This document shows, piece after piece, positions 26,293 to 62,904 of a stretch of DNA of 64,000 bases. Location: positions 20,088,001 to 20,152,000 of the forward strand of contig NC_043016.1 of NCBI RefSeq assembly GCF_006345805.1, read 5' to 3'. Every line of letters starts with the position of its first letter. Position 1 is the first letter of the stretch. The position numbers and the translations under genes were made by a program. This stretch comes from Octopus sinensis. Lineage: Eukaryota. The notes beneath the pieces are model-generated. The model searched no databases. It was not told the origin of the DNA and worked only from the letters and a program-made list of their open reading frames with translations.

Positions 26293-26300
26293 GGGTCTCT

Positions 26301-37418: not shown

Positions 37419-38444
37419 TGATGAAAAAAAAGAAAAAAAACCTCGGATGTCAATGCAAACTAGTTATTAGCTGACGAGTCATTTAAGTTTTGTCAACATC
37501 ACATCTAAAATATTCAATTTCTCAGTAAATCATTTGTGGTTATCAAGTGGGGAAGAAAAAAGTCTTAGTAGAATTAGAGCAGTGTTTACTTTTAAATCTT
37601 TTGTACACATCAAAAGAATATTCAGACACACAAACTCGAAATTTTCTTACCAAAGTCTATCTAGTAATAAAATTTAAAGTTTGTGTTTATATCCTTGGTA
37701 AGTTCGTCTTAGTAATTCATGACTAGTTTTGATTTATGCAAAGTCAACCTGCACAAATCTAAACCAGTAAATTTTAATCTATTTTCAAAAATACTTTCTC
37801 ATATATATTTCTAATTTTAAAACATTCAATATATAAAAACTTTATCTTCTCCATCTCTGACGAGTGAAAGTATTGTCTATCAATGTGTATCAACAATCGA
37901 TTCCATTATAATGACAATACTTTCATGAAATGATCGTAAGATGCATTAATTAACAAATTTTTAAGGTGTCATATTTCATATATTTATATATATTTTTAAT
38001 ACAATACTACACAAATGCATAACACAAATGTTAACTTAATTCCTAAGCAAATGAAAGCAGATAAGAGGTAAAAAAAAACAAAACAAAATTTCCAAATTTT
38101 CACTACCAGATGAGAGATTCTAGATATTGAATGATATGTAAACAAAGAGAATGTTGAGAATCAAAAAATGATTGCCTATGCTCTTCACCAGAGAGTAGTT
38201 GAAGGTTGAAGGAGAAAAGGGGTTGGTGGCCCAGTTAAGAAGGTCAGAATATAAAAATGAGGAAGGACAGGGGCAATAAAAGATAAAGCAGCAACAAAAG
38301 GTTGATTAGAATATTCTAAAAATGGAATCTGACAGTGGTCAGATATATACAAATCCAAGCAACCCACAAGATGGATTTGCACAAACAAAAATGTTGAAAG
38401 ATGAATTTATAAAGTTCCAACTGAGCAAGAGAAATTTTCTAGCA

Positions 38445-38734
38445 CTGGCCCAAAAAATTCGAGCGAGGTCATTGCCATTACCGCCTGACTGGCTCATGTG
38501 CAAAAATTTGAGCGTGGTCGTTGCCAGTACCGCCTGACTGGCCCCCGTGCTGGTGGCACATAAAAGCACCCACTACACTCTCGGAGTGGTTGGCGTTAGG
38601 AAGGGCATCCAGTTGTAGAAACTGTCAGATCAAGACTGGAGCTTGGTGCAGTCATCTGGTTCGCCAGCCCAGTCAAACCGTCCAACCCATGCTAGCATGG
38701 AAAGCGGACATTAAACAACGACGATGATGATGAT
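38445..38734 (+). mobile_element. RTE-tailed SINE inserted in the satellite
   Basis: Family body ending gacgatgatgatgatg. The satellite module resumes immediately after it (tagttgctaataatctagc). Confidence 0.85.
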
Positions 38735-40029
38735 GTAGTTGCTAATAATCTAGCAGATCAGGGAGCCAATTTTATCATCAAAGCAGCAAGAATACGACCC
38801 CACTGGGCACTGTGAATCATCCCAGTTTAACAAAAGAACTAAAAACATTTCCCATGACTTTAAGCATTCACCGGTAATGACAGTGTATCTGTGCTACATT
38901 TTCATGGATTTCATTTACCAGTAGAGTTTCCACATGTCTTTCAATGACTTCCCATCAACTTAGTGTCCTCTGATATAATTGTGAAGAATGTGGATTCAAG
39001 ACATCTATTGACCATAAACCTGCCTTCTGAGGACAGTATCTCAGACTGATTTTATCATAAAAATAAGAATGTGATCCCATCGGACATTATGAAGAAACCA
39101 GATTTGATAATGAAAATTAAAACACTTCTGAGAGACGTGGGTAGTTACAGATTAACACACCCCAATTTCCATTAAAAGACCAACTTGTTCTTGTCTCTTG
39201 AGTAAACCATTAATTACTGTAGAATTAGGCAACATGAAAGTTGATGTCTATGTACTAAGTCTCTATCATGCTTTTGCATGCATGCTGCACTCTTTCCACG
39301 GATCCCCAGAATTATTCTGAAAAAATGTATCACAATTAAGATGATAAAGTGTATGGGTTCAGGACACCTGTATACCATAAACTAACCAGCAAGAAATGAT
39401 CAAAGAAATACTCACCTATTTAACAAGTACCCAGGAAGCATACCTCCACTCTAGCTAAGAGGAGGGAAAAGGATGACATGCAAAAAAAAATAATTGAAAC
39501 AAATATGTCAACTATGTCAGCAGCCACTCTGAAAACATACAAAACATCCTACCCAAGTTCTATATTTAAGAGATGAAGAATTATGTATATTATTTACATC
39601 ACTGTAAACCTACATTCAGAGGACAATAGCACAACTTCAAAATCCCACCATCCACATACAATATGAAGAGAGGGCTTGTTCATTTCTTACATTGTCCCTA
39701 ACAGTAAGTAGTGATCCTAAAACATACCAGCAAGAAATAAGATTAAGAAACACAAAAAAAAAAAAAAATCAGCAGCAATATGTCATGTCAGAGACCTCTT
39801 AGAAAACAAACAAAATGTACTACAAAAGATGCATTGGAAAACATTGAAAGATGAATATGTAAAGAGATTCTAATCCAGGCAAGAACCAATTCAGTCAGTT
39901 AATGATATATACAAAAATTGAAACTACTAGCTAAAGATTGCAGGTACAGAGCTGTGGACACAGACTCACAAAAATGAAGCTGTTCGTGATGCATTTATTT
40001 ATCTTGGGATTAACATAATCTTCAACTCG

Positions 40030-40290
40030 CTGTTATTATTGTATTGAAAAAGAGGCGACAGCGATTGTAGAATCTGTGAGAAAATGGTCTCATTTTCTTC
40101 TTGGACATAACTTCACAATAATAACTGATCAAAACAGTGTGGCTTTTATGTTTAATTGTCAAAAGCACAGTAAACCTAAAAACGAAAAGAAGCGTTGGCA
40201 AATCGGACTAGCCCAGTATAAATTTGATATTTACCGCCAAGAAAAGTTTAATGTTGCATCTGATGCTTTATCATGTACTTATTGCACAGC
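40030..40290 (+). mobile_element. Ty3/Gypsy RNase H fragment
   Basis: EATAIVESVRKWSHFLLGHNFTIITDQNSVAFMF...RWQIGLAQYKFDIYR..NVASDALS. Confidence 0.8.
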
Positions 40291-40562
40291 TATGACTGAT
40301 AATGAACCATATTGTATTCATTCAGCGACGTATGCTGAAAAAGTAAACATGCTTTTATACTGCTTCTTACACTTCTTAGATTACGCATGTCGTATGTATA
40401 CTGAGTCAGTCACTTCACGCGCTATGTATTTCACACGCCATAATAATTACTACAGTACATCACGTGTGACTCGGGCAAGTCAGTTATTAGTGATTACAAT
40501 TAAAACGAGAATATCTGACACCAAGGCCTAAGACTGGTTTTGCTTTTTCTTCACCCATCGCT

Positions 40563-41150
40563 ATGGCTACTAAGAAGAGAAAGGTTGATGTCGAATGTCA
40601 CATTTTCAATAAAGAATGGGAAGAAAAGTACTTTTGTGGGGAAATAAACGACCAGAAAGCTAGATGCCTGATATGCAATGAAAGTGTTGCTGTTATGAAA
40701 GTGTAGAATATTCGTCGTCACTATGAAGTAAAACATCTCTCAACACATTCTAAATATTCTGGGAAGTTGCGATCTGAGAAATTTGAATCTATGAAATGTA
40801 GTTTGGAATCTCAAAGGAATTTCTTTACGAAAAAGTTTGTTGCAAATGAATCTATCAGTAGTGAATAAGTTGGCAGAGTGAGGAAAACCATTTACTGATG
40901 GAAACTTTATAAAAGAGTGCATGATGGAAGCAGTAAATGACTTGTGTCCTGAAAAAGCTAGCATGTTTGGCTGTGTCAACCTTTCAGCAAGTTCAATTGT
41001 GAGGAGAATAGAACTTGGAGAGAATATACAGTTACAGATACGCGAGAAAGCTAAGAAATTTTTGTTGTACTATTTTGCAATGGATAAATCTACTGATCTC
41101 TCTAGTATGTCACAACTTCTTGTGTGCATTCGTGGTGTTAATTGCAACGT
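40563..41150 (+). mobile_element. hAT transposase 5' fragment (SPIN/GTF2IRD2-like)
   Basis: MATKKRKVDVECHIFNKEWEEKYF...CLICNESVAVMKV.NIRRHYEVKH...KPFTDGNFIKECMMEAVNDLCPEK...LSASSIVRRI...AMDKSTDLSSMSQLLVCIRGV. Confidence 0.85.
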
Positions 41151-42449
41151 TAAGATCAAGGAGTCACGCAGTAGGACTGAACCCAGAACCATGTGGTTGG
41201 TAAGCAAGCTACTTACCACAGCCACTTACTGAATTGTTGAAGCTGTTGTTGTAAGTGTTTTGTGAACTGACTGTTATTTGCTAATAATCTAACAGATCAG
41301 GGGGCCAAATTTACGATAAAAACAGAGAATGTAACCCCACTGGGCCTCATGAAAGGTCCAAATTTAACAAAGGAAATATAAACATATTTCCCAGCAATAC
41401 AAGCATTCACAGAGAATGGTTAATTTTCGTGCAATTAAGTTGATTCTCAGTACAACTTTAGAGTTGCTGTTTTTGTAGTAAGCCCACAAAGATCCATAAG
41501 ATGGATTTGCACAAACAAAAGTATTGAATGATAAATTTGTAAAGCTCAATTGAGCAAGAAAGATAGATCTTGTAGCACTGTAGTTGCTAATTTAGCTCAT
41601 ACAGAAGTCAAGTTTATTATAAAAACAATAAGAAGCAGACTCCACAGGACCTCATTGAAAGTCTAAATTTAAGAGTAAAATGTATCCCTATCACAATAAT
41701 TTCAACCTCTTTAGTGTCCCCTGATGTAATAATTGTGAAGGTTATGGGTTGAAGACATCCATAGGCAATAAATACAACTTGAGAGGAGAGTATCACAAGT
41801 TCAATTCCCATTACCCATACAACAGAAAGAGGATTGCGCATTTCATACAACATTGACCAAAATCAAAGTAGTGAACCTGAAACATACCAGCAAAAAATGA
41901 TCAGTCTTAGAAACACAAGAAAATCCTGCAACAATATGCAGACTCCATGTCATACGTCAGAGTAAACTCAAAAAAACATCATACACAAGATCCACCATAT
42001 GCATTTATACAAAAATGGAATGATGAATATGTAAAGCTTGAATTGAGAAAGGAAGAAAGACTCTCTGGTGTAGTATCTGCTAATAATCTAGCACAATAGA
42101 GAAGTTCCTTTGACCACAAAAATAATCTGGATCTAAGAAAGGAAATAAAGACCTGTAGTGAGATGAGAAGAAATTATTTTCTTGCTGTGGCACAATTCAG
42201 TTGTGCTTTGGAAGATTTTTTAGCCAATAACAGCTGCAGGCATATGAATAAAAGGGCAGTGATCTGTCTTAGGTAAAGAACAGCCTACAGCAACAAAGTG
42301 GCTGTTTCAAATTAGTTAATGAATAGAAGGCCCAACAGTAACATAGCTTCTCGATAGCACTGCCAGGCCAGGGATCTTTGGTGATTGTTCATAGGTCCTT
42401 TGTTAATACAAAAAAAAATCAACAACACCAGTAAATTTCGCTGACACTC

Positions 42450-43108
42450 TGCGTCAGAAGAAAGAGATTGTAACATTTACAAATGAAGAGCTCATAGAAA
42501 CGAGAGCTCTCTTTACAACCCGTGGGCAAGATTTAGTGCTACATACACTTCAACACAAAGCAAGAAATAGAAAATAAGACAATTATATATAAAATTATAA
42601 GAAAAACAAAAAACTAAATGAACAGATTACAAAAACAGATGTAGAAAAATGCTTAAAAAACATAATGAAAGAAAAAGAATATATAAACTGGGGTCCCCAG
42701 TTTAACACAGTAGTGGTCCGCTTCCCTAACCAAGAAGTGGCAAAAGCTCACTCTACTGAGTCTCTGGGAAATGATGAAATCATCATGGTCCCATACTATA
42801 AAAACCAGAGAGTGAGTCGAATCACTATTAAAAATGTACCTCCCGAGATTCCTAACAAATAGATAACAGGGGCAATCTGTTACCATTTAAAAAATATCAA
42901 CATTTTGGAAACCGCTGTGTACCTTGGCAACATTTGGGGTGGGAAGACAATAGCGGTGACCATACAGATTGAGGGGGCCTCTATCGAGAGCCTACCGGAT
43001 AAGATCCACTTGGAAAATGGGCAATGCCTATATGTTGTAGCAGAAGGCAAAAAGCCTAGATGCTACAACTGTGGCAGCCCCGAACATTTAATTGCCAAGT
43101 GCGCTCTG
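42450..43108 (+). mobile_element. Gag-like ORF1 fragment with a CCHC zinc knuckle (Tx1/L1-type)
   Basis: ...VVRFPNQEVAKAHST...RVSRITIKNVPPEIP...LPDKIHLENGQCLYVVAEGKKPRCYNCGSPEHLIAKC (CX2CX4HX4C), with one in-frame stop and upstream frameshifts. Confidence 0.78.
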
Positions 43109-43990
43109 GTAAATGTAAAGATGGACAAAATGCCACTAAGCATTTTGGCCAGTGTGCTAACAATTCTGTCAGGTTGCTGCCTTCTTTTTCTCTTTGGTAG
43201 TGACCTGAGAAGGATTTGAACTCCGAATGTAAGGAGTCGGAAGAAGTGCCACTAAGCATTTTGTCCAATGGAATAATGATTCTGCCTGCTCACAGGACAG
43301 AGAGGCTTGCAGACTTCTACATTTTGCCTGTAAAAAGGGACACATAGACACTGTAAAACTACTACAGCAGAATGGCACTGATGTCAGTAAAGAAAGATGG
43401 CGAGGGCGCCCTTACTTCTTGCTTGTTGGAATATTTTACTTTGCATTTTTTCTTTCTTTCCTTTCCATTTTCTCCCTCCTATTTCTCCAAAGTTAGAGTA
43501 TAAGTCAAGTTTATATGCAGTCCTTGACCAAGCTGAAATGGAGATCCACAAAATTCTGCCTGCTCACAGGACAGAGATGATTGCAGGCTTCTACATTTTG
43601 CCTCTTTTAATGGATACACAGACACTGTAAAACTACTACACCAGAATGGTGCTGATGTCAGCAAAAAGATGGTGAGGGCACCATTACTTCTTGCTTGTTG
43701 GAGTATTTTATTTTGCATTTTTTCTTTCTTTCCTTTCCATTTTCTCCCTCCTATTTCTCCAAAGTTAGAGTATAAGTCAGGTTTATACGCAGTCCTTCAC
43801 CAAGCTGAAATGGAGATCCACAAAATTCTGCCTGCTCACAGGGCAGAGATGATTGCAGGCTTCTACATTTTGCCTCTTTTAATGGATGCACAGACACAGT
43901 AAAACTACTACACCAGAATGGCACAGATGTCAGCAAAGAAGGATGGTGAGGGCACCCTTACTTCTTGCTTATTGGAATATTTTACTTTGC
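43105..43990 (+). repeat. Ankyrin-repeat-derived tandem units (~272-274 bp, ~3 copies)
   Basis: 43314 onward reads LLHFACKKGHIDTVKLLQQNGTDVSK, then after a frameshift RAPLLLACWN. Later units read QDRDDCRLLHFASFNGYTDTVKLLHQNGADVSK. Confidence 0.85.
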
Positions 43991-44121
43991 ACTTTCTCCT
44001 TCCTCTTTCTTGTTTATGTCGACTTGCAGTCTGCAGGGGGTTAATGTAGTGAGACAGGAATAATCTATTTTGTTGATGTGACATAATTCAGTTGTGCTGA
44101 TCAGACCAAAGCCGGGTTACG

Positions 44122-44372
44122 CACAGATGGACCAGCTAAATCTACACAAAGCTTAGCCCCAACAGTAAGAACCAAAGAAGGGAAGGGTGCACATCGAGAT
44201 GAACCAGCTAAATCCATAGAAAGCTTATCCACAACTGAAAGAACCAAAGAAGTGGAGGGTGCACATCCAGATGAACCAGCTAAATCCTTACAAAGCTTAG
44301 CCCCAACAGTAAGAACCAAAGAAGGGAAGGGTGCACATCCAGATGAACAAGCTAAATCAGTACAAAGCTTAC
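44122..44372 (+). repeat. 72-bp minisatellite (~3.4 copies), codon-preserving
   Basis: accagctaaa at 44131, 44203 and 44275, acaagctaaa at 44347. The plus frame reads PAKSTQSLAPTVRTKEGKGAHRDE-like 24-aa units. Confidence 0.9.
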
Positions 44373-44398
44373 CATAATGGATGAGACAATTGGTTTAA

Positions 44399-44578: not shown

Positions 44579-44596
44579 TTAAAAGAGAAAATGTGA

Positions 44597-47500
44597 ATTC
44601 CATGTTGGATGTCGGAGAATACTTGGAGAAACATCCTCCACAAGATCGATTTAAAGAACAGATGGAATGATGAATTTGTAAAGCTCATATTGAGCAAGAA
44701 AAAGAAATTCTCTGGTGCAATATTTGCTAATAATGTAACACGATAGGAGAGTGCACTTGTCCTAATGAAGAATCCGGATCTAAGAAAGGAAATAAAAGTA
44801 TTTTCCAGAGACTTGATTAGGTACAAATAAATACATGTTTCAATTTTCATTAAAACACCAATGTCTTCCAATCTTTTCAGTGATCAATTAATGAATGTAA
44901 AATTGAGACTGCATTAAAGTCAATGCCTACTTAGAATGATTAATACTCTATGGAACAACGTAAAGCAAACAAAACAGTAACTTCATAGATAGAGAGAATA
45001 TCAGCTGTATGTGTAGGTTCTTGGTGAAGCTCAATCTAAGATTCACAAAATGAACTTGCACAAACAAAGATATTCAATTGGGAATTTGTAAAGATCAAAA
45101 TGAGCAAGACAGGCTTTCTAGTGTAGTAGTTGCTAGCTACCTATTAGATCAAGGAGCCAAGTTTCTCCCAAAAAAGAAGAAAAAGATTTCTCTGGAACTA
45201 ATTAAAAATATAGGTTTCAAAGAGATATGATCCAGATTTAACAAAAGAAATAAAGACTTCTTTCGCATCACTACAAGCCTTCACAGGCGATGGCAATCTG
45301 CTTTCACTTAGGGGGCTTATTAGAGAATCAGCCACTTCAAAGTGGGCTGAGAACCAAACTGACATCCCCACAATGGCTCTGCACAAACAAAAATATTGAA
45401 ACATGAATCTATAAAGCTCAAATTGAGCAAAGATGACAGATTTTTTACATGGTAATTGCTAAATATCTAGCCAACCAGGGAGCGGAATTTACCATAAAAA
45501 TAAGAATGTAATCTCACTGGGTCTTAAGAAAGATCCAGATTTAGCAAAGAAAATAATAACATTTTTCCATATTAGAGAAACAGAAAAGTCCAAAGAGGGT
45601 TGAGAACCAACCTGAGATCCACAAGATTGATTTGCACAAACAAAAACATTAAATCATTATTCTTTAAAGCTCAAACTGAGCAAGAAAGAAAGTCTCTGGT
45701 GTAGCATTTGCTAATAATCTAGTACAATAGGGAAGTCCATTTGGCAGAGTCAATGAGGACTGTGTACTTCATACAACACTGACCAAAAACAAAGTAGTGA
45801 ACCTGAAACACACCAGCAAAAAATGATCAGTCTAAGAAACACAAGAAAATCCTGCAACAATATGCACACTCCATGTAATACGTCAGAGTAAACTTAGAAA
45901 AACATCCCACACAAGATCCACCATATGCATTATACAAAAATGGAATGATGAATATGTAAAGCTGGAATTGAAAAAGGAAGAAAGACTCTCTGGTGTAGTA
46001 TTTGCTAATATCTTACGCAATAGGGAAGTCCGTCTTGCCTCATAAAAAATCTGGATCTAAGACAGAAAAAAAGCATTTCCCAGATTCAAAGAGGATTGCT
46101 CATTTCATTTATCCACTTCTGCTAGGAGGAGAGAAGTGGATGAAATGCAAGATAAACCTGCAACAGTATGTCAACCCTGTATGAGAAGCCTCTCCGAAAA
46201 CATACAAAACATCCTGAATGTAAAGACAGACAAAATTCCGCTAAGCATTTTGCCAAGTGTGCTAACAATTCTGTCAGGTTGCTGCCTTCTTTTTCCCTTT
46301 CGTAGTGACCTGAGAAGGATTTGAAGGCCGAATGTAAGAAGTCGGAAGAAGTACCACTAAAAATTTTGTCCAATGGAATAATTAATGATTCTGCCTACTC
46401 AGAGGACAAAGACGCTTGCAGACTTCGAAATTTTGCCTTTTAGAATGGATACACAGACATTGTAAAACTACTACACCAGAATGGTACTAATGTTAGAAGT
46501 TGGAAGAATTTCTACAACAGAATAGTACTGATGTAAGAAGTTTGAAGAAGTGCCACTAAGCATTTTGTCCAGTGGTCTGATTCTGCCAGCTCACAGGACA
46601 GAGATGATTGCAGACTTCTACATCTTGCCTCTTTTAACGGATATACAGACACAGCAAAACTCCTACAGCAAAATGGCATGGATGTCAGCAAAGAAAGATG
46701 GTGAGGGCACCCTTGCTTCTTGCTTATTGGTATATTTTAATTTGCATTTTTTCTTTCTTCCTTTCCATTTCTCCCTCCTTTTTCTCCAAAGTGTAAAAGT
46801 CAGGTTTATATGCAGTCCTTCACCAAACTGAAATGGAGATCCACAACATTCTGCCTGCTCACAGGACAGAGAAGCTTGCAGACTTCTACATTTTGCCTGT
46901 TAAAAGGGACACATAGACACTGTAAAACTACTACAGCAGAATGGCACTGATGTCAGCAAAGAAAGATGGTGAGGGCACCCTTACTTCTTGCTTGTTGGAA
47001 TATTTTAATTTGCATTTTTTCTGTCTTTCCTTTCCATTTTCTCCCTCCGCTTTCTCCGAAGTTAGGCTAAGAGTCAAGTTTATATGCAGTCCTTGACCAA
47101 GCTGCAATGGAGATCCACAAAATGGATTTACACAAAGAAAAACATTGAACAATGAATTTCTAAAGATCAAAATGAGCAAGATAAATGGGCTCTCTATGAG
47201 GTAGTTCAAGATTGTAAATTAGATCCAAGAAGATGACTTCACCAGACCTAATTAACATTCCAAGTTTAAAAGAAAAAATGCCAACTCCATGTTGGATGTC
47301 GGAGAATACTTGGAGAAACATCCTCCACAAGATCGATTTAAAGAACAGATGGAATGATGAATTTGTAAAGCTCATATTGAACAAGAAAAAGAAATTCTCT
47401 GGTGCAATATTTGCTAATAATGTAACACGATAGGAGAGTGCATTTGTCCTCATGAAGAATCCGGATCTAAGGATGGAAATAAAAGTATTTTCCAGAGACT

Positions 47501-50500
47501 TGATTAGGTACAAATAAATACATGTTTCAATTTTCATTAAAACACCAATGTCTTCCAATCTTTTCAGTGATCAATTAATGAATGTAAAATTGAGACTGCA
47601 TTAAAGTCAATGCCTACTTAGAATGATTAATACTCTATGGACAACGTAAAGCAAACAAAACAGTAACTTCATAGATAGAGAGAATATCAGCTGTATGTGT
47701 AGGTTCTTGGTGAAGCTCAATCTAAGATTCACAAAATGAACTTGCACAAACAAAGATATTCAATTGGGAATTTGTAAAGATCAAAATGAGCAAGACAGGC
47801 TTTCTAGTGTAGTAGTTGCTAGCTACCTATTAGATCAAGGAGCCAAGTTTCTCCCAAAAAAGAAGAAAAAGATTTCTCTGGAACTAATTAAAAATATAGG
47901 TTTCAAAGAGATATGATCCAGATTTAACAAAAGAAATAAAGACTTCTTTCGCATCACTACAAGCCTTCACAGGCGATGGCAATCTGCTTTCACTTAGGGG
48001 GCTTATTAGAGAATCAGCCACTTCAAAGTGGGCTGAGAACCAAACTGACATCCCCACAATGGCTCTGCACAAACAAAAATATTGAAACATGAATCTATAA
48101 AGCTCAAATTGAGCAAAGATGACAGATTTTTTAACATGGTAATTGCTAAATATCTAGCCAACCAGGGAGCGGAATTTACCATAAAAATAAGAATGTAATC
48201 TCACTGGGTCTTAAGAAAGATCCAGATTTAGCAAAGAAAATAATAACATTTTTCCATATTAGAGAAACAGAAAAGTCCAAAGAGGGTTGAGAACCAACCT
48301 GAGATCCACAAGATTGATTTGCACAAACAAAAACATTAAATCATTATTCTTTAAAGCTCAAACTGAGCAAGAAAGAAAGTCTCTGGTGTAGCATTTGCTA
48401 ATAATCTAGTACAATAGGGAAGTCCATTTGGCAGAGTCAATGAGGACTGTGTACTTCATACAACACTGACCAAAAACAAAGTAGTGAACCTGAAACACAC
48501 CAGCAAAAAATGATCAGTCTAAGAACACAAGAAAATCCTGCAACAATATGCACACTCATGTAATACGTCAGAGTAAACTTAGAAAAACATCCCACACAAG
48601 ATCCACCATATGCATTATACAAAAATGGAATGATGAATATGTAAAGCTGGAATTGAAAAAGGAAGAAAGACTCTCTGGTGTAGTATTTGCTAATAATCTT
48701 ACGCAATAGGGAAGTCCGTCTTGCCTCATAAAAAATCTGGATCTAAGACAGAAAATAAAAGCATTTCCCAGATTCAAAGAGGATTGCTCATTTCATTTAT
48801 CCACTTCTGCTAGGAGGAGAGAAGTGGATGAAATGCAAGATAAACCTGCAACAGTATGTCAACCCTGTATGAGAAGCCTCTCCGAAAACATACAAAACAT
48901 CCTGAATGTAAAGACAGACAAAATTCCGCTAAGCATTTTGCCAAGTGTGCTAACAATTCTGTCAGGTTGCTGCCTTCTTTTTCCCTTTCGTAGTGACCTG
49001 AGAAGGATTTGAAGGCCGAATGTAAGAAGTCGGAAGAAGTACCACTAAAAATTTTGTCCAATGGAATAATTAATGATTCTGCCTACTCAGAGGACAAAGA
49101 CGCTTGCAGACTTCGAAATTTTGCCTTTTAGAATGGATACACAGACATTGTAAAACTACTACACCAGAATGGTACTAATGTTAGAAGTTGGAAGAATTTC
49201 TACAACAGAATAGTACTGATGTAAGAAGTTTGAAGAAGTGCCACTAAGCATTTTGTCCAGTGGTCTGATTCTGCCAGCTCACAGGACAGAGATGATTGCA
49301 GACTTCTACATCTTGCCTCTTTTAACGGATATACAGACACAGCAAAACTCCTACAGCAAAATGGCATGGATGTCAGCAAAGAAAGATGGTGAGGGCACCC
49401 TTGCTTCTTGCTTATTGGTATATTTTAATTTGCATTTTTTCTTTCTTTCCTTTCCATTTTCTCCCTCCTTTTTCTCCAAAGTGTAAAAGTCAGGTTTATA
49501 TGCAGTCCTTCACCAAACTGAAATGGAGATCCACAACATTCTGCCTGCTCACAGGACAGAGAAGCTTGCAGACTTCTACATTTTGCCTGTTAAAAGGGAC
49601 ACATAGACACTGTAAAACTACTACAGCAGAATGGCACTGATGTCAGCAAAGAAAGATGGTGAGGGCACCCTTACTTCTTGCTTGTTGGAATATTTTAATT
49701 TGCATTTTTTCTGTCTTTCCTTTCCATTTTCTCCCTCCGCTTTCTCCGAAGTTAGGCTAAGAGTCAAGTTTATATGCAGTCCTTGACCAAGCTGCAATGG
49801 AGATCCACAAAATGGATTTACACAAAGAAAAACATTGAACAATGAATTTCTAAAGATCAAAATGAGCAGATAAATGGGCTCTCTATGAGGTAGTTCAAGA
49901 TTGTAAATTAGATCCAAGAAGATGACTTCACCAGACCTAATTAACATTCCAAGTTTAAAAGAAAAAATGCCAACTCCATGTTGGATGTCGGAGAATACTT
50001 GGAGAAACATCCTCCACAAGATCGATTTAAAGAACAGATGGAATGATGAATTTGTAAAGCTCATATTGAACAAGAAAAAGAAATTCTCTGGTGCAATATT
50101 TGCTAATAATGTAACACGATAGGAGAGTGCATTTGTCCTCATGAAGAATCCGGATCTAAGGATGGAAATAAAAGTATTTTCCAGAGACTTGATTAGGTAC
50201 AAATAAATACATGTTTCAATTTTCATTAAAACACCAATGTCTTCCAATCTTTTCAGTGATCAATAATGAATGTAAAATTGAGACTGCATTAAAGTCAATG
50301 CCTACTTAGAATGATTAATACTCTATGGAACAACGTAAAGCAAACAAAACAGTAACTTCATAGATAGAGAGAATATCAGCTGTATGTGTAGGTTCTTGGT
50401 GAAGCTCAATCTAAGATTCACAAAATGAACTTGCACAAACAAAGATATTCAATTGGGAATTTGTAAAGATCAAAATGAGCAAGACAGGCTTTCTAGTGTA

Positions 50501-52950: not shown

Positions 52951-54129
52951 TCTTAGTGAAGTTTTGGGAAGAAGTCCTGTGAATCATCTTACATTACATA
53001 ACAGAAAAGAAAAAGGTTAGATTTAGACAATGTATATTTTAATGTTTTGTGATATTGTATTATGCTGTATTACAATGATGATTTTTCAAAGTACATACGG
53101 GTGAATCAAGCCATTAATTATTAGTATTTAAATCCACAAGAGGTATTTATACATACAGAATCACTGAAAGATGAATTTGTAAAGCTCAATTGAGCAAGAA
53201 AGATAGATCTTGTAGCACTGTAGTTGCTAATTTAGCTCATACAGGAGTCAAGTTTATTATAAAAACAATAAGAAGCAGACTCCACGGGACCTCATTGAAA
53301 GTCTAAATTTCAACCTCTTTAGTGTCCCCTGATGTAATAATTGTGAAGGTTATGGGTTGAAGACATCCATAGGCAATAAATACAACTTGAGAGGAGAGTA
53401 TCACAAGCTCAATTCCCATTACCCATACAACAGAAAGAGGATTGCGCATTTCATACAACATTGACCAAAATCAAAGTAGTGAACCTGAAACACACCAGCA
53501 AAAAATGATCAGTCTTAGAAACACAAGAAAATCCTGCAACAATATGCAGACTCCATGTCATACGTCAGAGTAAACTCAAAAAAACCTCATACACAAGATC
53601 CACCATATGCATTTATACAAAAATGGAATGATGAATATGTAAAGCTCGAATTGAAAAAGGAAGAAAGACTCTCTGGTGTAGTATTTGCTAATAATCTTAC
53701 GCAATAGGGAAGTCCATCTGTCCTCATGAAAAATCCAGATCTAAGACAGAAAATAAAAGCATTTCCCAGAGTTAAAGAGGATTGCTCATTTCATACAACA
53801 TCGACCAAAAACTAAGCAGTGAACCTGAAAAACATTTATCCACTCCAGCTAGGAGGAGAGAAGGGGATGAAATGCAAGAAAAACCTGCAACAGTATGTTA
53901 ACCCTATTTCAGAAGCCTCTCATAACACATACAAAACATCCAGGACAAAATCAACAAGATGGATTCATAGAAACAATACACAGAATAATATATTTGTATG
54001 GTTCAATTTGAGCAAGGAAAAAAGACTCTGGTGTAGTATTTGCTAATAATCTAGAAAAACAGATCCAGATGAATTTTGAGGTGAAATGAACTTCTCTAAG
54101 AAAGGGAATAAATTTATTTTTTGGCCTCA

Positions 54130-54330
54130 AACAGTTGAAGGAATCCGGGGTAGATGTAGACCCAGGAAGACATGGGATGAGGTGGTCAAGCATGACCTTC
54201 AAATATTGGGTTTCAAAGAGGCAATGACGAAAGACTGAGACCTCTAGATATATGCTGTGACTGCGAAGACCTGAGAAATAATGTAGTTCAAGGCTGTTTC
54301 CTGCACCAGCTTCACATAGAAGCCCCCAGC
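54130..54330 (+). mobile_element. RTE 3' fragment (a second copy lies at ~63870-64000)
   Basis: ggtagatgtagacccaggaagacatgggatgaggtggtcaagcatgacctt... is homologous to 1320-1420. Confidence 0.8.
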
Positions 54331-54399
54331 TTTTCCAAAGTGCCTTGGATTACAGGACGGCCTGCGGTACTTACATTGGATCATAGGGCGACCTGCTGT

Positions 54400-54901: not shown

Positions 54902-55114
54902 GCTGTGGTACAATTCAGTTGTACTGTGGATGATTTCAGCCAATAAGAGCTGCAGGTGTATGAATAAAATGGCAGTGATCTGTCTGAGGTAAAGAACGCC
55001 CTACAGCAACAAAGTGGCTGTTCCAAATTATTTCATGAATAAAAAGCCTAAAACTAACATCGCTTTTTTTAAAAAGGTAAAAGTCTACCTCAGAGGAACT
55101 TGAACTTAGAATGT

Positions 55115-57130
55115 AAAGATGGACAAAATGCCGCCAAGCATTTTTCCCAGTGTGCTAACAAGTCTGTCAGGTTACTGCCTTCTTTCTCTCTTTAGTAGTG
55201 ACTTGAGGAGGATTTGAACGCCGAATGTAAGAACTTGGAAGAAGTACCACTAAGCATTTTGTCCAATGGAATAATGATTCTGCCTGCTCACAGGACAAAG
55301 ATGGTTGCAGATTTCTACATTTTTGCCTGTTAAAATGGACACAGAAACGTAAAACTACTACAGCAGAATGACACTGATGTTAGCAAAGACAGATGGTGAA
55401 GGCACCATTACTTCTTGGAATATTTTAATTTGCATTTTTTCTTTCTTTCCTTTCTATTTTCTCACTCCTATTCCTCCAAAGGTAGAGTAAAAGTCAGGTT
55501 TATATGCAGTCCTTGACCAAGCTGAAATGGAGATCCACAACATTCTGCCTGCTCAGAGGATAGAGATGATTGGAGACTTCTACATTAAGCCTGTTGCAAG
55601 GGACACAAAGACACTGTAAAACTCCTACAGCAAAATGGCACGGATGTCAGCAAAGAAAGATGATGAGGGCACCATTACTTCTTGCTTGTTGGAATATTTT
55701 ATTTTGCATTTTTTCTTTCTTTCCTTTCCATTTTCTCCCTCCTATTTCTCCAAAGTTAGAGTATAAGTCAAGTTTATATGCAGTCCTTGATCAAGCTGAA
55801 ATGGAGATCCACAAAATTCTGCCTGCTCACAGGACAGAGATGATTGCAGACTTCTACATTCTGCCTCTTTTAATGGATGCACAGACACAGTAAAACTACT
55901 ACACCAGAATGGCACGGATGTCAGCAAAGAAGGATGGTGAGGGCACCATTACTTCTTGCTTATTGGAATATTTTACTTTGCATTTTTTGTTTCTTTTCTT
56001 TCCATTTCTCCCTACTATTCCTCCAAAGGTAGAGTAAAAGTCAGGTTTATATGCAGTCCTTGACCAAGCTGAAATGGAGATCCACAAAATTCTGCCTGCT
56101 CACAGGACAGAGATGATTACAGACTTCTACATTTTGCCTCTTTTAATGGATACACAGACACTGTAAAACTACTATACCAGAATGGTACTGATGTCAGCAA
56201 AGAAAGATGGTGAAGGCACCCTTGCTTCTTGGAATATTTTAATTTGCATTTTTTCTTTCTTTCCTTTCTATTTTCTCACTCCTGTTTCTCCAAAGAGTAA
56301 ATGTCAGGTTTATATGCAGTCCTTGACCAAGCTGAAATGGAGATCCACAAAATTCTGCCTGCTCACAGGACAGAGATGATTACAGACTTCTACATTTTGC
56401 CTCTTTTAATGGATACACAGACACTGTAAAACTACTATACCAGAATGGTACTGATGTCAGCAAAGAAAGATGGTGAAGGCACCCTTGCTTCTTGGAATAT
56501 TTTAATTTGCATTTTTTCTTTCTTTCCTTTCTATTTTCTCACTCCTGTTTCTCCAAAGAGTAAATGTCAGGTTTATATGCAGTCCTTGACCAAGCTGAAA
56601 TGGAGATCCACAACATTCTGCCTTAACACAGGACAGAGATGATTGCAGACTTCTACATTTTGCCTGTCAAAATGGACACAGAAACGTTGTAAAACTACTA
56701 CACCAGAATGGCACGGATGTCAGCAAAGAAGGATGGTGAGGGCACCATTACTTCTTGCTTATTGGAATATTTTACTTTGCATTTTTTGTTTCTTTTCTTT
56801 CCATTTCTCCCTACTATTCCTCCAAAGGTAGAGTAAAAGTCAGGTTTATATGCAGTCCTTGACCAAGCTGAAATGGAGATCCACAACATTCTGCCTGCTC
56901 AGAGGATAGAGATGATTGCAGACTTCTACATTTTGCCTCTTTTAATGGATGCACAGACACAGAAAAACTACTACACCAGAATGGCACTGTTGTCAGCAAA
57001 GATAGAGGGTGAGGGCACCATTACTTCTTGCTTGTTGGAATATTTTACTTAGCATTTTTTTTCTTCTTTGATTTCCATTTTCTCCAAAGTTAGACTTAGG
57101 GTCAGGTTTATATGAAGTCTTTGACCAAGC
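55115..57130 (+). repeat. Ankyrin-derived tandem array, ~7 units of 263-274 bp
   Basis: Repeating caggacagagatgattgcagacttctacattttgcc...gtaaaactactacaccagaatggcac.gatgtcagcaaaga...gggcaccattacttcttgc + pyrimidine tract + gcagtccttgaccaagctgaaatggagatccacaa. Track ORFs 56182 and 56445 are 263 apart. Confidence 0.9.
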
Positions 57131-57439
57131 TTAAATAGAGATCCACAAAATGGATTTACACAAAGATAAACATTGAACAATGAATTCGTAAAGCTCAAAA
57201 CGATCTAGAAACTCGGGCTTTCTATCAGGAAGTTGAAAATTGTAAACTAGATCCAAGAAGATGACTTCACCAGACCTAATTAACATTCCAAGTTTAAAAG
57301 AAGAAATGCCAACTCCATGTTCGATGTCTGAGAAAACTTGGAGAAACATCCTCCACAAAATCGATGTAAAGAATAGATGGAATGATGTATTCGAAAAACA
57401 GAAATTGAACAAAGTATGGACAGTTACCTCCCTTGAAAA

Positions 57440-57830
57440 AAGTTACGTCATCCATTGGCCACTTGATGGCACATGTGTTGCATTGTGGGAGAATTAAATC
57501 TATAGTTTTTGGAGGGTGCAACAAAAGTGATTAGACGTATCATCATATTGATCATCTGTATCCAAAAGTAACCAGGTATCTTTGTAAGTGCTGCAGAAGT
57601 GGCCGTCCACTGCGCCAAAGTCCAAAGAGGTTGGTACCTTCATGACATGAACAGCCACAGATCGAAGCTTTCAGAGTTGAAGGGCCAACTGTGTAGACAC
57701 GTCCAATTGTGTCACCTTTGTACAAGGCTGAATCGAACCTCGTACAACGGCCTTGTTTTCACTGTTGCCACTGGGAAGATGATTGATTCCATGTATAATA
57801 ATGTGGCACTTCAGTGTACAAAATAGACTT
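57440..57830 (-). mobile_element. Helitron RepHel coding fragment
   Basis: Minus strand YTEVPHYYTWNQSSSQWQQ.KQG...TIGRVYTVGP...VDGHFCSTYKD...DDQYDDT. Confidence 0.8.
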
Positions 57831-57959
57831 TGTAAAGGAGTCTAGTTAGCATGGGTGAAAGAAGGTTATGAGAGTGGTCTTTGGCAGGGCAGCTGCTTGT
57901 TCAATGAGGTTGTCTTGTGCAAAGGAAATTCATTGCCTACTTCCAAATGAACGCCAAGA

Positions 57960-58840
57960 GTTCAAAAGTTTGAAATCATTTTTGGAGAAGTACACAAAGA
58001 AAAGTATTACAAATGAATGAACTCTTGCTGTGGACTGATGGTTTCAAGTATGACAATGTGTTACTATTTGTGACAGATGTAGAACCTTTTATGAAAAGGG
58101 CTGCTAAAACATTACAAGTTCTGTTTAATACATAGAGTGCATAGAATTGCCAAAGAAGTATGCTTACTATTTCCAGATTTTAACAGGTTCATTGCAAATG
58201 GTGAAAAAATGTTTCTTTAATCTCCATGTAGGTGTGAACTTTGCTGCGAACATGAACCAACACTGAGTTTACCTCCAAAACCTGTTCTCATCAGAGTGGA
58301 GACGTGGATAACCGCTGCTGTATGTGATACTTCAAATTTTGATACTCTAAAGGAAATGTTTAACGCATTAAACAGTGAAGAAGCTTCTCTTACACGTTCA
58401 AAATTTGATTCCTAACTCCAGTGTTCATATCGATCTTGACTTTATTGTTGCACATTTTCAAGCACTAACACAAACTATACTAGCTTTAGTTAAAGCAGAA
58501 CATTTCTATGTTACAAGGTCTATCTTTGACAGCACAACTGAAAAGGTGAGGAGTAAACCTGGAGAGAGGCAGACATAGCTAACAAAATGGCAAAAAGTGA
58601 TTCACGCCAACACCGGCCTACAACAGATAAACGACATTGCAGAAGTTCTTAAAGGTGCAAATAAAGAACATGTTGGAAAGCTTTTGCATCTTTTAAACAT
58701 GCACCTTTGATACCAGCCAAAGTTGAAAGGTCTTTCTCAAAACTAAAACATCTGCTTTGAGATCAAACGTTGAATTTCACCACTGAAGACATAAAAAAGT
58801 TCAGAGTGGCATCTTGTAATAATACCCACAGCAATGGTGG
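57960..58840 (+). mobile_element. hAT-like (CGGBP1-related) transposase fragment
   Basis: DNVLLFVTDVEPFMKRAAKTLQVLF...HRVHRIAKEV..LFPDFNRFIANGEK...LPPKPVLIRVETWITAA...HAPLIPAKVERSFSKLKHLL. Confidence 0.75.
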
Positions 58841-61800
58841 CGATGTATAACAGTTTTTGGTTGCTGCTGTTTAGCATGGTTTGGTTAGTTTGATTTTATT
58901 TCCATTTTTAGAAAGTGTGTCCTCTTTTCTATGTTTTCTTATTAAAACTATTGTTTCATATGGATTATAAATTCCATTAATCAACTAGTACAAAATTATG
59001 CCAGCTCACCATCTTTTCCTTTATTTAGTGACCCTAGAGGAATTTGAACAAACTCAGAATGTAAGTGATTGCAAGAAGTGCCACTAAGCATTTTATCTGA
59101 TGTGCTAATGAATCTGCCAGCCTGCAGTAAACAAATATTGTAAAACACCTCTACATCTAGTCTGTTAGAACGGACACATGGCTAAGCTTGTAAAAACAAA
59201 GCACAGCATTTTATACAGTCTGATAGTTCATGCCTTTATAGCAAGTCTCTCTCCATGACTTATGGGTAGGTGCTGTTATTTGCATGGCAATCCATTTTAA
59301 TGCCCACAGATATCCAGAAGCTAAACTGTTCAGAATTATTGCACCTCTATACTGCAAATCTACCATCAGACAACAGTACTTTAACTTCAATTCCTACCAT
59401 CCATATAATATAAAGAGTAGGATTGCTCATTTCCTACAATATCAACCGAAAGCTATACAATGATTCTGAAACATACCAGCATGAAATGATCAGACTAAGA
59501 AACTCAAGACAATCCTGCAATAGTATGCAAACCCCACGTTAGACCTTTTGGAAAATTTACAAAACAGCCAACATGAAATCCACAAGATGGCTTTATAAAA
59601 ACAATATTAAGACGAATTTGTAAAGCTCAAACTGAGTAAGAAACAGGTTCTCTGCCGCAGTATTTGCTAATAACCTAGCATGACACGGAACTCATTTACA
59701 CCTCATAAAGAATCCAGATATAACAACAAATAAAAACATTTCCCAGACCCTTGGGTAGTTACACATATCAATTTCTACAATTTCCACAGCTGTAATAATT
59801 TCGAAGAATATGGGTTCAAGACAGCCACATATCATAAGCATACCATCAGAGGTGAGTAACTTAACTTGAATTCTCACAATATATTCACAGAATGGCTTTC
59901 CTATAACATCGACCAAAAACTAAGTAGTGATACTAAAATATACCAGCAAGATGGATTTGCACAAACAAAAAAAAAAAATTAAATCACTATTCATTGAAGC
60001 TCAAATTGAGCAAGAAGAACAGAATCTGTAGCACAGTAATTGCTAATTATCTAGCAGACCAGTAAGCCAAATGTACCAGATAATTAGGAAGAATGTAATC
60101 TCACTGGGCCTCATGGAGGATCCAGCTTTAAAAAAAAAAAAAGCATTTTCCATGTTAAAGAAGTGGCAACTTCATAGGGGGCTGAGAACCAAACTGATAT
60201 CCACAAGATGGATTTGCACAAACAAAAATATTAAATCATTATTCTTTAAAGCTCAAACTGAGCAAGAAAGAAAGTCTCTCTGGTGTAGCATTTGCTAATA
60301 ATCTAGTACAATAGGGAAGTCCATTTGGCTTCATGAAGAATCCGGATCTAAGACAGAAAATAAAAGCATTTGGCAGAGTCAATGAGGACTGCGTACTTCA
60401 TACAACACTGACCAAAAACAAAGTAGTGAACCTGAAACACACCAGCAAAAAATGATCAGTCTAAGAAACAAGAATATCCTGCAACAATATGCACACTCCA
60501 TGTAATACGTCAGAGTAAACTTAGAAAAACATCATACACAAGATCCACCATATGCATTTATACAAAAATGGAATGATGAATATGTAAAGCTGGAATTGAA
60601 AAAGGAAGAAAGACTCTCTGGTGTAGTATTTGCTAATAATCTTACGCAATAGGGAAGTCCATCTTGCCTCATGAAAAATCCGGGTCTAAGACAGAAAATA
60701 AAAGCATTTCCCAGATTCAAAGAGGATTGCTCATTTCATTTATCCACTCCAGCTAGGAGGAGAGAAGTGGATGAAATGCAAGATAAACCTGCAACAGTAT
60801 GTCAACCCTGTATGAGAGGCCTCTCCGAAAAAATACAAAACATCCTGAATGTAAAGACGGACAGGATGCCGCTAAGCATATTGCCCAGTGTGCTAACAAT
60901 TCTGTCAGGTTGCTGCCTTCTTTTTCTCTTTGGTAGAAGTACCACTAAACATTTTGTCCAATGGAATAATTATTCTGCCTGCTCACAGGACAGAGAAGCT
61001 TGCAGACTTATACATTTTGCCTGTTAAAAGGGACAAACAGACACTGTAAAACTACTACAGCAGAATGGCACTGATGTCAGCAAAGAAAGATGGTGAGGGC
61101 ACTCCTGCTATTTCTTGTTGGAATATTTTACTTTGCATTTTTTCTCTCTTTCCTTTCCATTTTCTCCCTCCTATTTCTCCAAAGGTAGAGTAAAAGACAC
61201 GATTATATGCAGTCCATGTCCAAGATGAAAAGCAGATCCACAAAATGGATTTACACAAAGAAAAACATTGAACGATGAATTTGTAAAGCTCAAAACAATC
61301 TAGAAAGACGGGATTTCTATCAGGAAGTTGAAGATTGGAAACTAGATCCAAGGAGATGACTTCACCAGACTTAATTAAGATTCCAACTTTTAAAAAAGAA
61401 TGCCAACTCCATGTTGGATGTCGGAGAATACTTGGAGAAACAACCTCCACAAGATTGATTTAAATAGTCGGAATGATGAATTTGTAAAGCTTATATTGAG
61501 CAAGAAAAAGAAATTCGCTGGTGCAATATTTGCTAATAAAGAAAAACAATTGAGAAGTGCATTTGTCCTAATGAAGAATCCGGATCTAAGAAAGGAAATG
61601 AAAGTATTTTCCAGAGACTTGATTAGGTACAAATAAATACATGTTTCAATTTTCATTAAAACACCAATGTCTTCCAATCTTTTTAGTGATCAATTAATGA
61701 ATGTAAAATTGAGACTGCATTGAAGTCAATGCCTACATAGAATGATTAATACTCTATGGAACAACGTAAAGCAAACAAAACAGTAACTTCATAGATGGAG

Positions 61801-62904
61801 TGAATATCAGCTGTATGTGTAGGTTCTTGGTGAAGCTCAATCTAAGATCCACAAATGAACTTGCACAAACAAAAATCACATTGGGAATTTGTAAAGATCA
61901 AATGAGCAAGACAGGCTTTCTAGTGTAGTAGTTGCTAGCTACCTATTAGATCAAGGAGCCAATTTTCTCCCAAAAAGCAGATTTCTCTGGACTAATTAAA
62001 AATATAAGTTTCAAAGAGAAATGATCCAGATTTAACAAAAGAAATAATGACTTATTTCGCATCACTACAAGCCTTCACAGGCGATGGCAATCTGCTTCCA
62101 TTTAGTGGGCTTATTAGAGAATCAGCCACTTCAAAGTGGGCTGAGAACCAAACGGACATCCCCACAATGGCTCTGCATAAACAAAAATATTGAAACATGA
62201 ATCTATAAAGCTCAAATTGAGCAAAGATGACAGATTTTTTAACATGGTAATTGCTAAATATCTAGCCAACCAGGGAGCTGAATTTATCATAAAAATAAGA
62301 ATGTAATCCCACTGGGCTCAAGGAGGATCCAGTTTAATCAAAAAGGAATTAGGCTTGATTTTGTTGTAGAGATTGTCTGACAGCCATGACTGGGCTCTCC
62401 TGCTTGTGTGGCATTGTGCAGAGTCCTGTTGCCAAACGTAGGGTCTTCCAGCAGCTACCCTCTTAAACCCAGTGTAGCACTACCTAATTTCAACCAAAGG
62501 CTTGTGAGTAAATTTGATAGAAACTGAAAGAAGCCCAGATATATATATATATCTGTGCGTGTGTATTATTATGTCTGTCTGTCCCCTGCCACTGTTTGAC
62601 AAGTAGTGTTGTGTTTATTTCTCTGTAACTTAGAAGTTTGGCAAAGGAGATAGATAGAATAAGTACAAGGATTTATAAAAAAACAAAATGAAAAACAAGT
62701 CCTAAGGTGGATTCATTCATCTAAAAATTCTTCAAGGTGATGCCGCAGCATGATCACAGTCTAATAACGAAGCCAAGTTAAAGATCTGTTTTGCCACACT
62801 TGCATGGGTTGGATAGATTTTCCAACACAGGATTTTTGCCACTTTTTGTGAGGTTCAAACTCTTTCTTCTTCATCTTTCACAGTTTTTGTTCATGTGGAT
62901 CTTT

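What the first reader, a model, noticed from the sequence alone, without database searches (positions are those of the whole stretch)
38240..62330. 24-kb mosaic satellite shuffled from Penelope RT pieces and ankyrin-repeat coding DNA
Seen in sequence: dozens of co-oriented 100-300 bp modules recur in varying order. After frame correction, some read as PLE RT, thumb or linker (SLF.K..TE; E.GFKT..YHK.T.RGQY.NFNSHHPYNIK.RIAHFLQ; ETYQQEMISLRN; KPATVCQPCMRGLSEKIQNI) and others as ankyrin repeats. At 46190-46240 and 60820-60870 the PLE linker joins directly onto the ankyrin module. The order is permuted relative to a PLE ORF, so this is not a simple tandem of elements. Inference: a PLE that had captured, or sat beside, an ankyrin transcript seeded repeated template switching or unequal exchange. 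That would be a route from retroelement plus host gene to a complex satellite. The PLE assignment rests on remembered motifs.
Basis: partly seen in the sequence, partly recalled or inferred. Interest (0 to 1): 0.7.

Follow-up and report, generated by a model that had tools for sequence, protein, structure and literature searches.

The report
Tandem array of retroelement, SINE and ankyrin pieces
A 24-kb stretch of an animal genome is a one-directional tandem array built from a dead Penelope-like retroelement fragment, SINE pieces and an ankyrin-repeat exon; it is a tidy but ordinary example of how junk fragments grow into satellite-like DNA.

Summary
From 38272 to 62337, 126 module matches all lie on the + strand, and none lies elsewhere in the window.

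There are two repeat units:
- An "A" unit of about 480 bp, with parts A1-A2-A3-A4.
- A "K" unit of about 270 bp, present 17 times.

A 2,687-bp higher-order repeat is present 2.6 times at 99.4% identity.

A consensus of A2, built without reference to any protein, reads EDYGFRTSIYYKPTFRGQYLNFNSHHP. It matches real Penelope-like element (PLE) proteins just C-terminal to their Pfam RVT_1 match (23 bits; 0 of 300 shuffles reach its score). A4 matches the PLE linker in three copies. K1 passes Pfam's ankyrin cut-offs.

- The order is not permuted. It is always the cycle A1>A2>A3>A4, with parts deleted, and A2>A4 follows the PLE reading frame.
- The linker does not join ankyrin directly. It joins 125-170 bp of antisense tRNA-derived SINE fragments.
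- The ankyrin piece carries an intron-like tail, so it came from genomic DNA, not a transcript.

A1, the commonest module, has no provable origin. The array has no reverse-transcriptase core, endonuclease or hammerhead ribozyme.

It most likely grew by unequal exchange at the DNA level and has no function.

The parts
38272..62337 (+). Whole co-oriented complex tandem array.
   Evidence: All module matches are on the + strand, and no A or K match lies outside the array.
38272..39864 (+). Old, decayed run of A units (A1, A2, A4, A2, A3 fragments).
   Evidence: One search shows KPTFRGQ*HNF...KRGLVHFL at 39570-39698.
39865..41274 (+). Inserted LTR-retrotransposon fragment. The ORF at 40076-40531 carries RT_RNaseH.
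   Evidence: PF17917, E 1e-6. No A or K match.
41490..42154 (+). One full A unit followed by one more A1: A1 41490-41679, A2 41699-41818, A3 41825-41884, A4 41903-41985, A1 41988-42154.
   Evidence: A2 scores 24.6 here in the frameshift-aware alignment.
42157..43110 (+). Gag-like fragment of another transposable element, ending in a CCHC zinc knuckle. It abuts the S spacer.
   Evidence: zf-CCHC, E 6e-4.
43111..44006 (+). S spacer (two SINE fragments) followed by 2.6 K units.
44579..51551 (+). Higher-order repeat of 2,687 bp, 2.6 copies at 99.4% identity. Its content is A4'-A1-A1-A1-A1-A3-A4-A1-A3'-A4-S-K1v-K-K-A1.
46119..46215 (+). A4, the PLE-linker module (STSARRREVDEMQDKPATVCQPCMRSLSENIQNILN). 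Other copies lie at 48807-48903, 53845-53926 and 60749-60845.
   Evidence: Alignment scores are 32.2, 25.9 and 36.3, with 0 of 300 shuffles reaching them.
46221..46389 (+). S spacer: two partial antisense copies of a 199-bp tRNA-derived SINE (S1 46214-46275, S2 46307-46395). The A4|S junction is at about 46220. The same block lies at 48902-49083, 43111-43286, 55074-55284, 59030-59119 and 60845-60979.
   Evidence: The SINE model was built only from copies in 1-38000; matches have E from 0.025 to 2e-18, most below 1e-5.
46581..47122 (+). Two K units inside the higher-order repeat. Each has K1 (ankyrin frame), K2 (intron-like, GTGAGG...polypyrimidine...AG) and K3.
51552..52737 (+). Further partial higher-order-repeat copy, 96-100% identical to copy 1 across its segments. 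It starts with an out-of-register jump from A4 into K2.
53131..54134 (+). One full A unit (A1 53132, A2 53304-53426, A3, A4), then one short unit (A1 53596, A3 53760, A4 53845-53926), then A1.
55074..57150 (+). S spacer followed by seven K units (period about 263-274 bp, about 88% identity).
59030..59200 (+). Old relic of S2 plus a DNA-level remnant of the K1 start, followed by a sequence reading CKTPLHLVC*NGHMAKLVK that looks like an ankyrin repeat. It lies directly upstream of the relic A units.
   Evidence: The ankyrin reading is by eye only: the K1 peptide profile is not significant here (E 7.1) and Pfam found nothing in this segment.
59250..60380 (+). Oldest readable A units, 73-84% identical to the higher-order repeat: A2 59257-59404, A3, A4, A1 59577, A2 59746-59880, A3, A1, A1.
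60367..62337 (+). Older copy of the higher-order repeat (92-95% identity). The A4|S junction is at about 60850. The ORF at 60671-61027 reads through A1-A3-A4-S-K1.

Best explanation
This is a non-coding, single-locus complex tandem array, a young satellite-like region.

Founder segment (inferred). Three things lay side by side:
- An internal piece of a dead Penelope-like element (PLE) reading frame, running from the thumb region to the linker. A1, of unproven origin, follows the linker.
- Two antisense fragments of a tRNA-derived SINE.
- One ankyrin-repeat exon with its intron-like flank.

Shown:
- The A unit (about 480 bp) and the K unit (about 270 bp) repeat head to tail in one orientation.
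- The A parts always follow the cycle A1>A2>A3>A4. Copies differ by internal deletions.
- A 2.69-kb block of units was duplicated recently (99.4% identity). The monomers inside that block are only 61-75% alike.
- Other transposable elements have since inserted into the array.

Inferred:
- Growth was by unequal crossing-over or replication slippage at the DNA level, not by reverse transcription.
- The array has no sequence-specific function.
For: - Tandem, co-oriented, single-locus layout.
- Layered ages: 99.4% identity between copies of the higher-order repeat; 92-97% for the older partial copies; 85-92% for K units; 73-84% for the relic at 59.2-60.4 kb; 61-75% between monomers within one higher-order copy.
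- PLE origin of A2. The consensus was built without reference to any protein. It scores 23.2 bits, and 42-43 in the frameshift-aware alignment against a shuffle maximum of about 20. It is 58-67% identical over 27-30 residues to real PLE proteins. In full-length reading frames the match lies just C-terminal to their Pfam RVT_1 match (RVT_1 ends at 535 in P0185; the A2 match is at 561-587).
- PLE origin of A4. The best hit in a reversed-sequence control has E 6.1.
- A2 maps to positions 467-493 and A4 to 542-579 of a profile built from 31 long PLE proteins. That is the same order as in the DNA.
- Ankyrin.
- SINE origin of the spacer.
- The K unit carries an intron-like tail and a SINE tail, so it is genomic DNA. 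K1, K2 and K3 diverge about equally, at 87-92% identity.
- 7 of 17 K1 frames are broken.
- No reverse-transcriptase core or endonuclease in the array.
- No Rfam match. The hammerhead core box CUGANGA occurs only 3 times in the array and never in a repeated module.
Against: - The origin of A1 (about 40 copies, the largest component) is not shown. So "PLE-derived" is proven for only about 330 bp of reading frame.
- Direct searches with stitched raw peptides found nothing in the protein database or in Pfam. The PLE signal is clear only in the consensus and in the best copies.
- Unequal exchange is inferred from the layout. No junction feature proves it.
- Genome-wide copy number, transcription and read support could not be examined.
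Confidence: 0.7

Rival explanations
1. A PLE reverse transcriptase switched templates, or captured an ankyrin transcript, and made the chimeric unit. Repeated switching then generated the mosaic.
For: A sharp junction between PLE-linker sequence and unrelated DNA lies at 46220 and 60850. Genomic PLEs are typically arranged head to tail, which has been attributed to more-than-unit-length reverse transcription (PMC4209133).
Against: - The captured DNA is an antisense SINE plus an exon with an intron-like tail, not cDNA.
- The PLE piece is internal. It has no demonstrable endonuclease, no 3' end, no terminal repeat and no hammerhead, whereas reverse transcription starts at the 3' end.
- The higher-order-repeat copies duplicate everything in register at 99.4% identity, which fits DNA-level duplication.
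Confidence: 0.1
2. The array is, or lies within, a functional unit. Candidates are a one-strand piRNA-producing cluster, a heterochromatin or centromere-related satellite, or a gene with repeated ankyrin exons.
For: All modules are co-oriented, and the region is rich in transposable elements. On the K consensus, some GT/AG choices would keep an open repeating 59-residue frame.
Against: - 7 of 17 ankyrin frames are broken.
- A 59-residue period holding a single ankyrin repeat is not a normal ankyrin stack.
- Exon-like and intron-like parts diverge equally.
- No homologues of the array's ORFs exist in the protein database.
- No expression data are available.
Confidence: 0.1
3. Assembly artefact: near-identical repeats were mis-joined or given the wrong copy number.
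For: The 2.69-kb copies at 99.4% identity are hard to assemble.
Against: The array also contains diverged copies (73-95%), unique transposable-element insertions and consistent junctions found in four different contexts. An artefact would not produce these.
Confidence: 0.05

Closest known systems
Satellite DNA and higher-order repeats born from retrotransposon-internal tandem repeats (for example the Lathyrus satellites derived from LTR retrotransposons, PMC7004042)
   Same: Head-to-tail monomers are derived from part of a retroelement and expanded locally. Identity between higher-order copies far exceeds identity between neighbouring monomers.
   Different: The source here is a coding fragment of a PLE, not a non-coding part of an LTR element. 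The unit is a chimera with SINE and ankyrin-exon DNA. Only one 24-kb locus was seen, and abundance in the genome is unknown.
Non-LTR retrozymes, which are tandem non-autonomous derivatives of PLEs (bioRxiv 10.64898/2026.07.22.740005; PMC4209133)
   Same: Tandem monomers of a few hundred bases related to PLEs, in an animal genome.
   Different: Retrozymes derive from the PLE terminal repeat and carry a hammerhead ribozyme in each monomer. Here the PLE part is coding sequence (thumb and linker) and there is no hammerhead.
pvB370 satellite and pDv elements of the Drosophila virilis group (Heikkinen et al. 1995, cited in PMC3833285)
   Same: A satellite family evolutionarily related to a dispersed mobile element.
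   Different: Different element part and monomer size, and no host-gene component. The suggested link between pDv and Penelope rests on my memory and was not checked.
Intact Penelope-like element
   Same: A2 and A4 match the thumb and linker of real PLE reading frames, in the right order.
   Different: No reverse-transcriptase core, no demonstrable GIY-YIG domain, no terminal repeats. A separate, collinear decayed PLE lies on the other strand at 15186-12802.

Membership tests
Penelope-like element (a copy of the element) | Reverse-transcriptase core (RVT_1-type motifs) | tested here: not met
   A frameshift-aware scan with a profile built from 31 long PLE proteins finds no hit to positions 250-450 in 38-63 kb. 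The same scan recovers the RT core of the PLE relic on the minus strand at 12.8-15.2 kb.
Penelope-like element (a copy of the element) | PLE-specific thumb and linker between the RT and the endonuclease | tested here: met
   The A2 consensus matches profile positions 467-493 (42-43 against a shuffle maximum of about 20). A4 copies match positions 542-579.
Penelope-like element (a copy of the element) | GIY-YIG endonuclease domain | tested here: inconclusive
   The best alignment of A1 falls where a collinear continuation would predict (profile 194-218: TQTLNDEFVKL..KDRL..SGVVF). However, 31-48 of 300-500 shuffles score as well, and no catalytic motif survives.
Penelope-like element (a copy of the element) | Flanking direct repeats carrying a hammerhead ribozyme | tested here: not met
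   No Rfam match at gathering score or at E<=5. CUGANGA occurs 3 times in the array and never in a repeated module. Minimal hammerhead variants not represented in Rfam were tested only through this core box.
Non-LTR retrozyme | Tandem monomers of about 170-400 nt | tested here: met
   A units measure 250-480 bp and K units 263-274 bp, arranged head to tail.
Non-LTR retrozyme | Hammerhead ribozyme in each monomer | tested here: not met
Satellite DNA with higher-order repeat | Identity between higher-order copies far above identity between monomers within a copy | tested here: met
   99.4% against 61-75%.
Satellite DNA with higher-order repeat | High copy number or long arrays genome-wide | not testable with these tools
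   The genome is not available. There were no matches in JGI metagenome contigs or in the protein database.
Ankyrin-repeat protein gene | Sequence matching the ankyrin-repeat profile | tested here: met
   Consensus peptide: Ank_4 33.6 bits (cut-off 22.7). Peptide of the copy at 43279: Ank 24.6 bits (cut-off 21.1). Three real copies joined: E 5e-22.
Ankyrin-repeat protein gene | Adjacent 33-residue repeats in an intact reading frame | tested here: not met
   Each ankyrin frame is separated from the next by about 165 bp of other sequence. 7 of 17 are broken by a stop or frameshift. There is no ankyrin match elsewhere in the window.

The most novel reading that the evidence does not exclude
The chimeric A-S-K unit was first made by PLE reverse transcription jumping onto host RNA or DNA, which would be a PLE-mediated route for capturing an exon. 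The resulting one-strand array would now act as a source of small RNAs against PLEs.
Probability: 0.07. Interest if true: 0.55.

Novelty: new member of a known kind. Interest (0 to 1): 0.3.

Why it matters
The locus preserves several ages of the same array side by side: old relic copies, diverged units, a 270-bp satellite and a 99.4%-identical higher-order repeat. That makes it a readable record of how an inert fragment of a retroelement coding region, SINE debris and a stray exon can be welded together and amplified into satellite-like DNA. It adds a PLE coding-region case to the known satellites derived from transposable elements. It does not change how such arrays are thought to form.

Tried and rejected
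- Protein database search with stitched raw peptides from 53.3 kb and 59.4 kb: no hit at E<=10.
- Pfam on raw frames, stitched peptides and consensus peptides: no PLE-related family. This is uninformative for the thumb. The local Pfam copy does not report PF26215 even for proteins that carry it in the precomputed table.
- A1 as the start of the GIY-YIG domain. The best alignment falls in the predicted place but is not significant, at about p 0.1.
- A1 as RT motif 7 (VFANNL resembling PFLDTLL, by eye): not recovered by the alignment.
- A1 or K3 derived from the SINE: no.
- K3 derived from the tail of A4: no.
- Retrozyme or hammerhead: no.
- Searches for other copies: exact look-ups of four window ORFs found nothing. 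ORFs from the array found nothing in the protein database. A 24-mer from the K unit found nothing in metagenome contigs.
- Codon-position bias in K1: only a weak excess at third positions.
- Identifying the organism. The SINE consensus resembles the abundant octopus SINE as I remember it, and the mix of transposable elements fits octopus genomes (PMC13282606). A literal sequence search of the paper library found nothing.
Full report
**Context**

The window is animal DNA rich in transposable elements, with about 37% GC. Outside the finding it contains:
- A LINE-type reverse-transcriptase ORF (RVT_1, E 3e-23) and a mariner-type transposase fragment.
- Eleven copies of a 199-bp tRNA-derived SINE.
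- A decayed but collinear Penelope-like element (PLE) on the minus strand at 15186-12802.

**Observation**

- Self-BLAST shows that 43-57.4 kb and 59.4-62.3 kb are almost wholly self-similar, with patchier similarity at 38.3-42.2 kb.
- A single 386-bp seed (59575-59960), iterated with nhmmer, finds 46 matches. All are on the + strand and within 38363-62337. Nearly all begin at model positions 1-5, so they are copies of one monomer truncated to different lengths.
- A second model in a different phase gives the same picture.
- Seven module consensuses (A1-A4, K1-K3) give 126 matches. All are on the + strand and none lies outside 38362-62286.

**Anatomy**

The A unit is about 480 bp when complete and has four parts:
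- A1, about 170 bp, about 40 copies.
- A2, about 140 bp.
- A3, about 75 bp.
- A4, about 100 bp.

Complete A units lie at 41490-41985, 53132-53593 and 59577-59935 (the last lacks A4).

Most copies lack A2, giving A1-A3-A4. Others lack A2 to A4, giving A1-A1. Wherever two parts are adjacent they follow the cycle A1>A2>A3>A4>A1.

The K unit measures 263-274 bp and has 17 copies. They form arrays at 43280-44006 (2.6 copies) and 55278-57150 (7 copies), plus two to three per higher-order repeat.

A 2,687-bp higher-order repeat holds A4'-A1-A1-A1-A1-A3-A4-A1-A3'-A4-S-K1v-K-K-A1. Its copies are:
- 2.6 copies at 44579-51551, 99.4% identical.
- A partial copy at 51552-52737, 96-100% identical.
- An older copy at 60367-62337, 92-95% identical.

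The monomers inside one copy are only 61-75% alike.

About a third of the interval is other DNA. It includes an LTR-retrotransposon RNase H fragment at 40076-40531 and a gag-like fragment with a zinc knuckle at 42157-43110.

**Is part of the array PLE-derived?**

Direct tests on raw sequence were weak:
- Stitched peptides found nothing in the protein database.
- Pfam found nothing.
- The Pfam result says little. The local Pfam copy does not report PF26215 even for proteins listed as carrying it.

I therefore collected real PLE proteins:
- About 145 more representatives, including 31 proteins of 600 residues or more, came from a profile search. That search found 65,058 proteins at E<=0.001.
- Of the six scanned with Pfam, five pass the RVT_1 cut-off. 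One of six in that scan and three of six C-terminal fragments also show a weak GIY-YIG match (about 20-23 bits; one reaches the 22.6-bit cut-off). This is the architecture that defines PLEs (PMC4209133).

Results against these profiles:
- A six-frame hmmsearch of the window gives E 7e-4 to 0.012 for the A4 copies and for A2 at 59347-59433. The best hit in the reversed sequence has E 6.1.
- The strongest test uses the A-monomer consensus, which was built from DNA alone. It reads NNCEDYGFRTSIYYKPTFRGQYLNFNSHHP and matches the profile at 23.2 bits, E 2e-9.
- In my frameshift-aware alignment that consensus scores 42-43, against a shuffle mean of about 13 and maximum of about 20 (0 of 300).
- Individual PLE proteins are 58-67% identical to it over 27-30 residues. 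In full-length reading frames the match lies just C-terminal to their Pfam RVT_1 match, for example residues 561-587 of the 826-residue P0185, whose RVT_1 match ends at 535.
- A4 copies (STPARRREVDEMQDKPATVCQPCMRGLSEKIQNILN) score 26-36, with 0 of 300 shuffles reaching that.
- A2 maps to positions 467-493 and A4 to 542-579 of the full-length profile, the same order as in the DNA. Nothing in the array hits the RT core or the endonuclease.

A1 is not significantly PLE-like. Its best alignment falls exactly where a collinear continuation into the endonuclease would predict, but about 10% of shuffles do as well. It is not SINE-derived either. Its origin is open.

**Ankyrin**

- The K1 consensus reads SACSQDRDDCRLLHFASYNGYTDTVKLLHQNGTDVSKE.
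- The consensus-type peptide scanned with Pfam passes Ank_4 (33.6 against a cut-off of 22.7).
- The peptide of the copy at 43279 passes Ank (24.6 against 21.1).
- Three real copies joined give E 5e-22.
- Two subtypes occur (KKGHID and FNGYTD).
- The frame is followed by GTGAGG, about 90 nt ending in a long polypyrimidine tract, and AG. That looks like an intron.
- K1, K2 and K3 diverge about equally, and 7 of 17 frames are broken.
- There is no other ankyrin match in the window.

**The junction**

What follows is a 125-170-bp spacer, S, and not ankyrin.

A SINE model built only from copies in 1-38000 matches S as two partial antisense SINE copies. It also matches the 17-60 nt just before each first K1. 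E values range from 0.025 to 2e-18, most below 1e-5.

The same S-K block occurs at 43111 and 55074, behind unrelated DNA. An old S2 fragment at 59030-59119 lies next to the oldest A units and is followed by a possible ankyrin relic, read by eye only. So the association of S with the A units is old.

**Mechanism**

The following point to growth at the DNA level, by unequal exchange or slippage, from one composite founder segment:
- In-register duplication of whole composite blocks.
- Graded ages across the array.
- Deletion derivatives of a single cyclic unit.
- Genomic rather than cDNA character of the ankyrin piece.
- Absence of a PLE 3' end, terminal repeat or hammerhead.

This step is inferred, not shown. 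Function is most likely nil.

**Comparison and novelty**

Satellites derived from transposable elements, with higher-order repeats, are well known (PMC7004042). So are PLE-related tandem repeats, the retrozymes, but those derive from the terminal repeat and carry a hammerhead (bioRxiv 10.64898/2026.07.22.740005; PMC4209133).

This array is a new example. Its source is a PLE coding fragment fused to SINE and exon DNA.

**Limits**

There was no genome, read or expression data. The taxon is unverified.

Noticed in passing
window 12802-15186 (minus strand): A decayed but collinear Penelope-like element. It matches positions 197-629 of the full-length PLE profile, in order, covering the RT core, the thumb and the start of the GIY-YIG domain. 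It is interrupted near 13271-13413 by a 72-bp x2 tRNA-like tandem repeat. It shows no DNA similarity to the A units.
   Followed up: partly
window 5548-25394 (minus strand), e.g. 24530-25394: Eleven copies of a 199-bp tRNA-derived SINE lie in 1-38000, all in one orientation. Four of them sit head to tail at 24530-25394. From memory the consensus resembles the abundant octopus SINE, so the window may come from a cephalopod. This is unverified.
   Followed up: partly
window 30133-32848 (+): LINE-type retrotransposon. The ORF at 31952-32848 has RVT_1 (E 3e-23). The upstream ORFs at 30133-30864 and 31453-31815 have no Pfam match. This is the most GC-rich part of the window (46%).
   Followed up: partly
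window 26729-27304 (+): Mariner-type transposase fragment (Pfam Transposase_1, E 1e-5).
   Followed up: partly
window 44124-44371: A 72-bp tandem repeat (3.4 copies, 86% identity) sits in the unassigned 580 bp between the first K array and the higher-order repeat. It is unrelated to the A, K or S modules.
   Followed up: no
window 1492-1691, 2368-2550, 3018-3312, 4849-5020, 16768-16949, 25913-26293, 38509-38736, 54396-54906: A second dispersed repeat family of about 200-300 bp, in both orientations, associated with an ATG/ATC trinucleotide run. Two copies lie inside the array interval.
   Followed up: no
window 57415-58993: A 1.6-kb unassigned insert between the K array and the relic units. 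One frame reads ...KVERSFSKLKHLL.DQTLNF..., which resembles the C-terminal motif of hAT transposases by eye. Pfam found nothing.
   Followed up: partly
tool behaviour: Proteins listed with precomputed PF26215 give no PF26215 hit in the local Pfam scan. A missing Pfam hit for the PLE thumb is therefore not evidence against it.
   Followed up: yes
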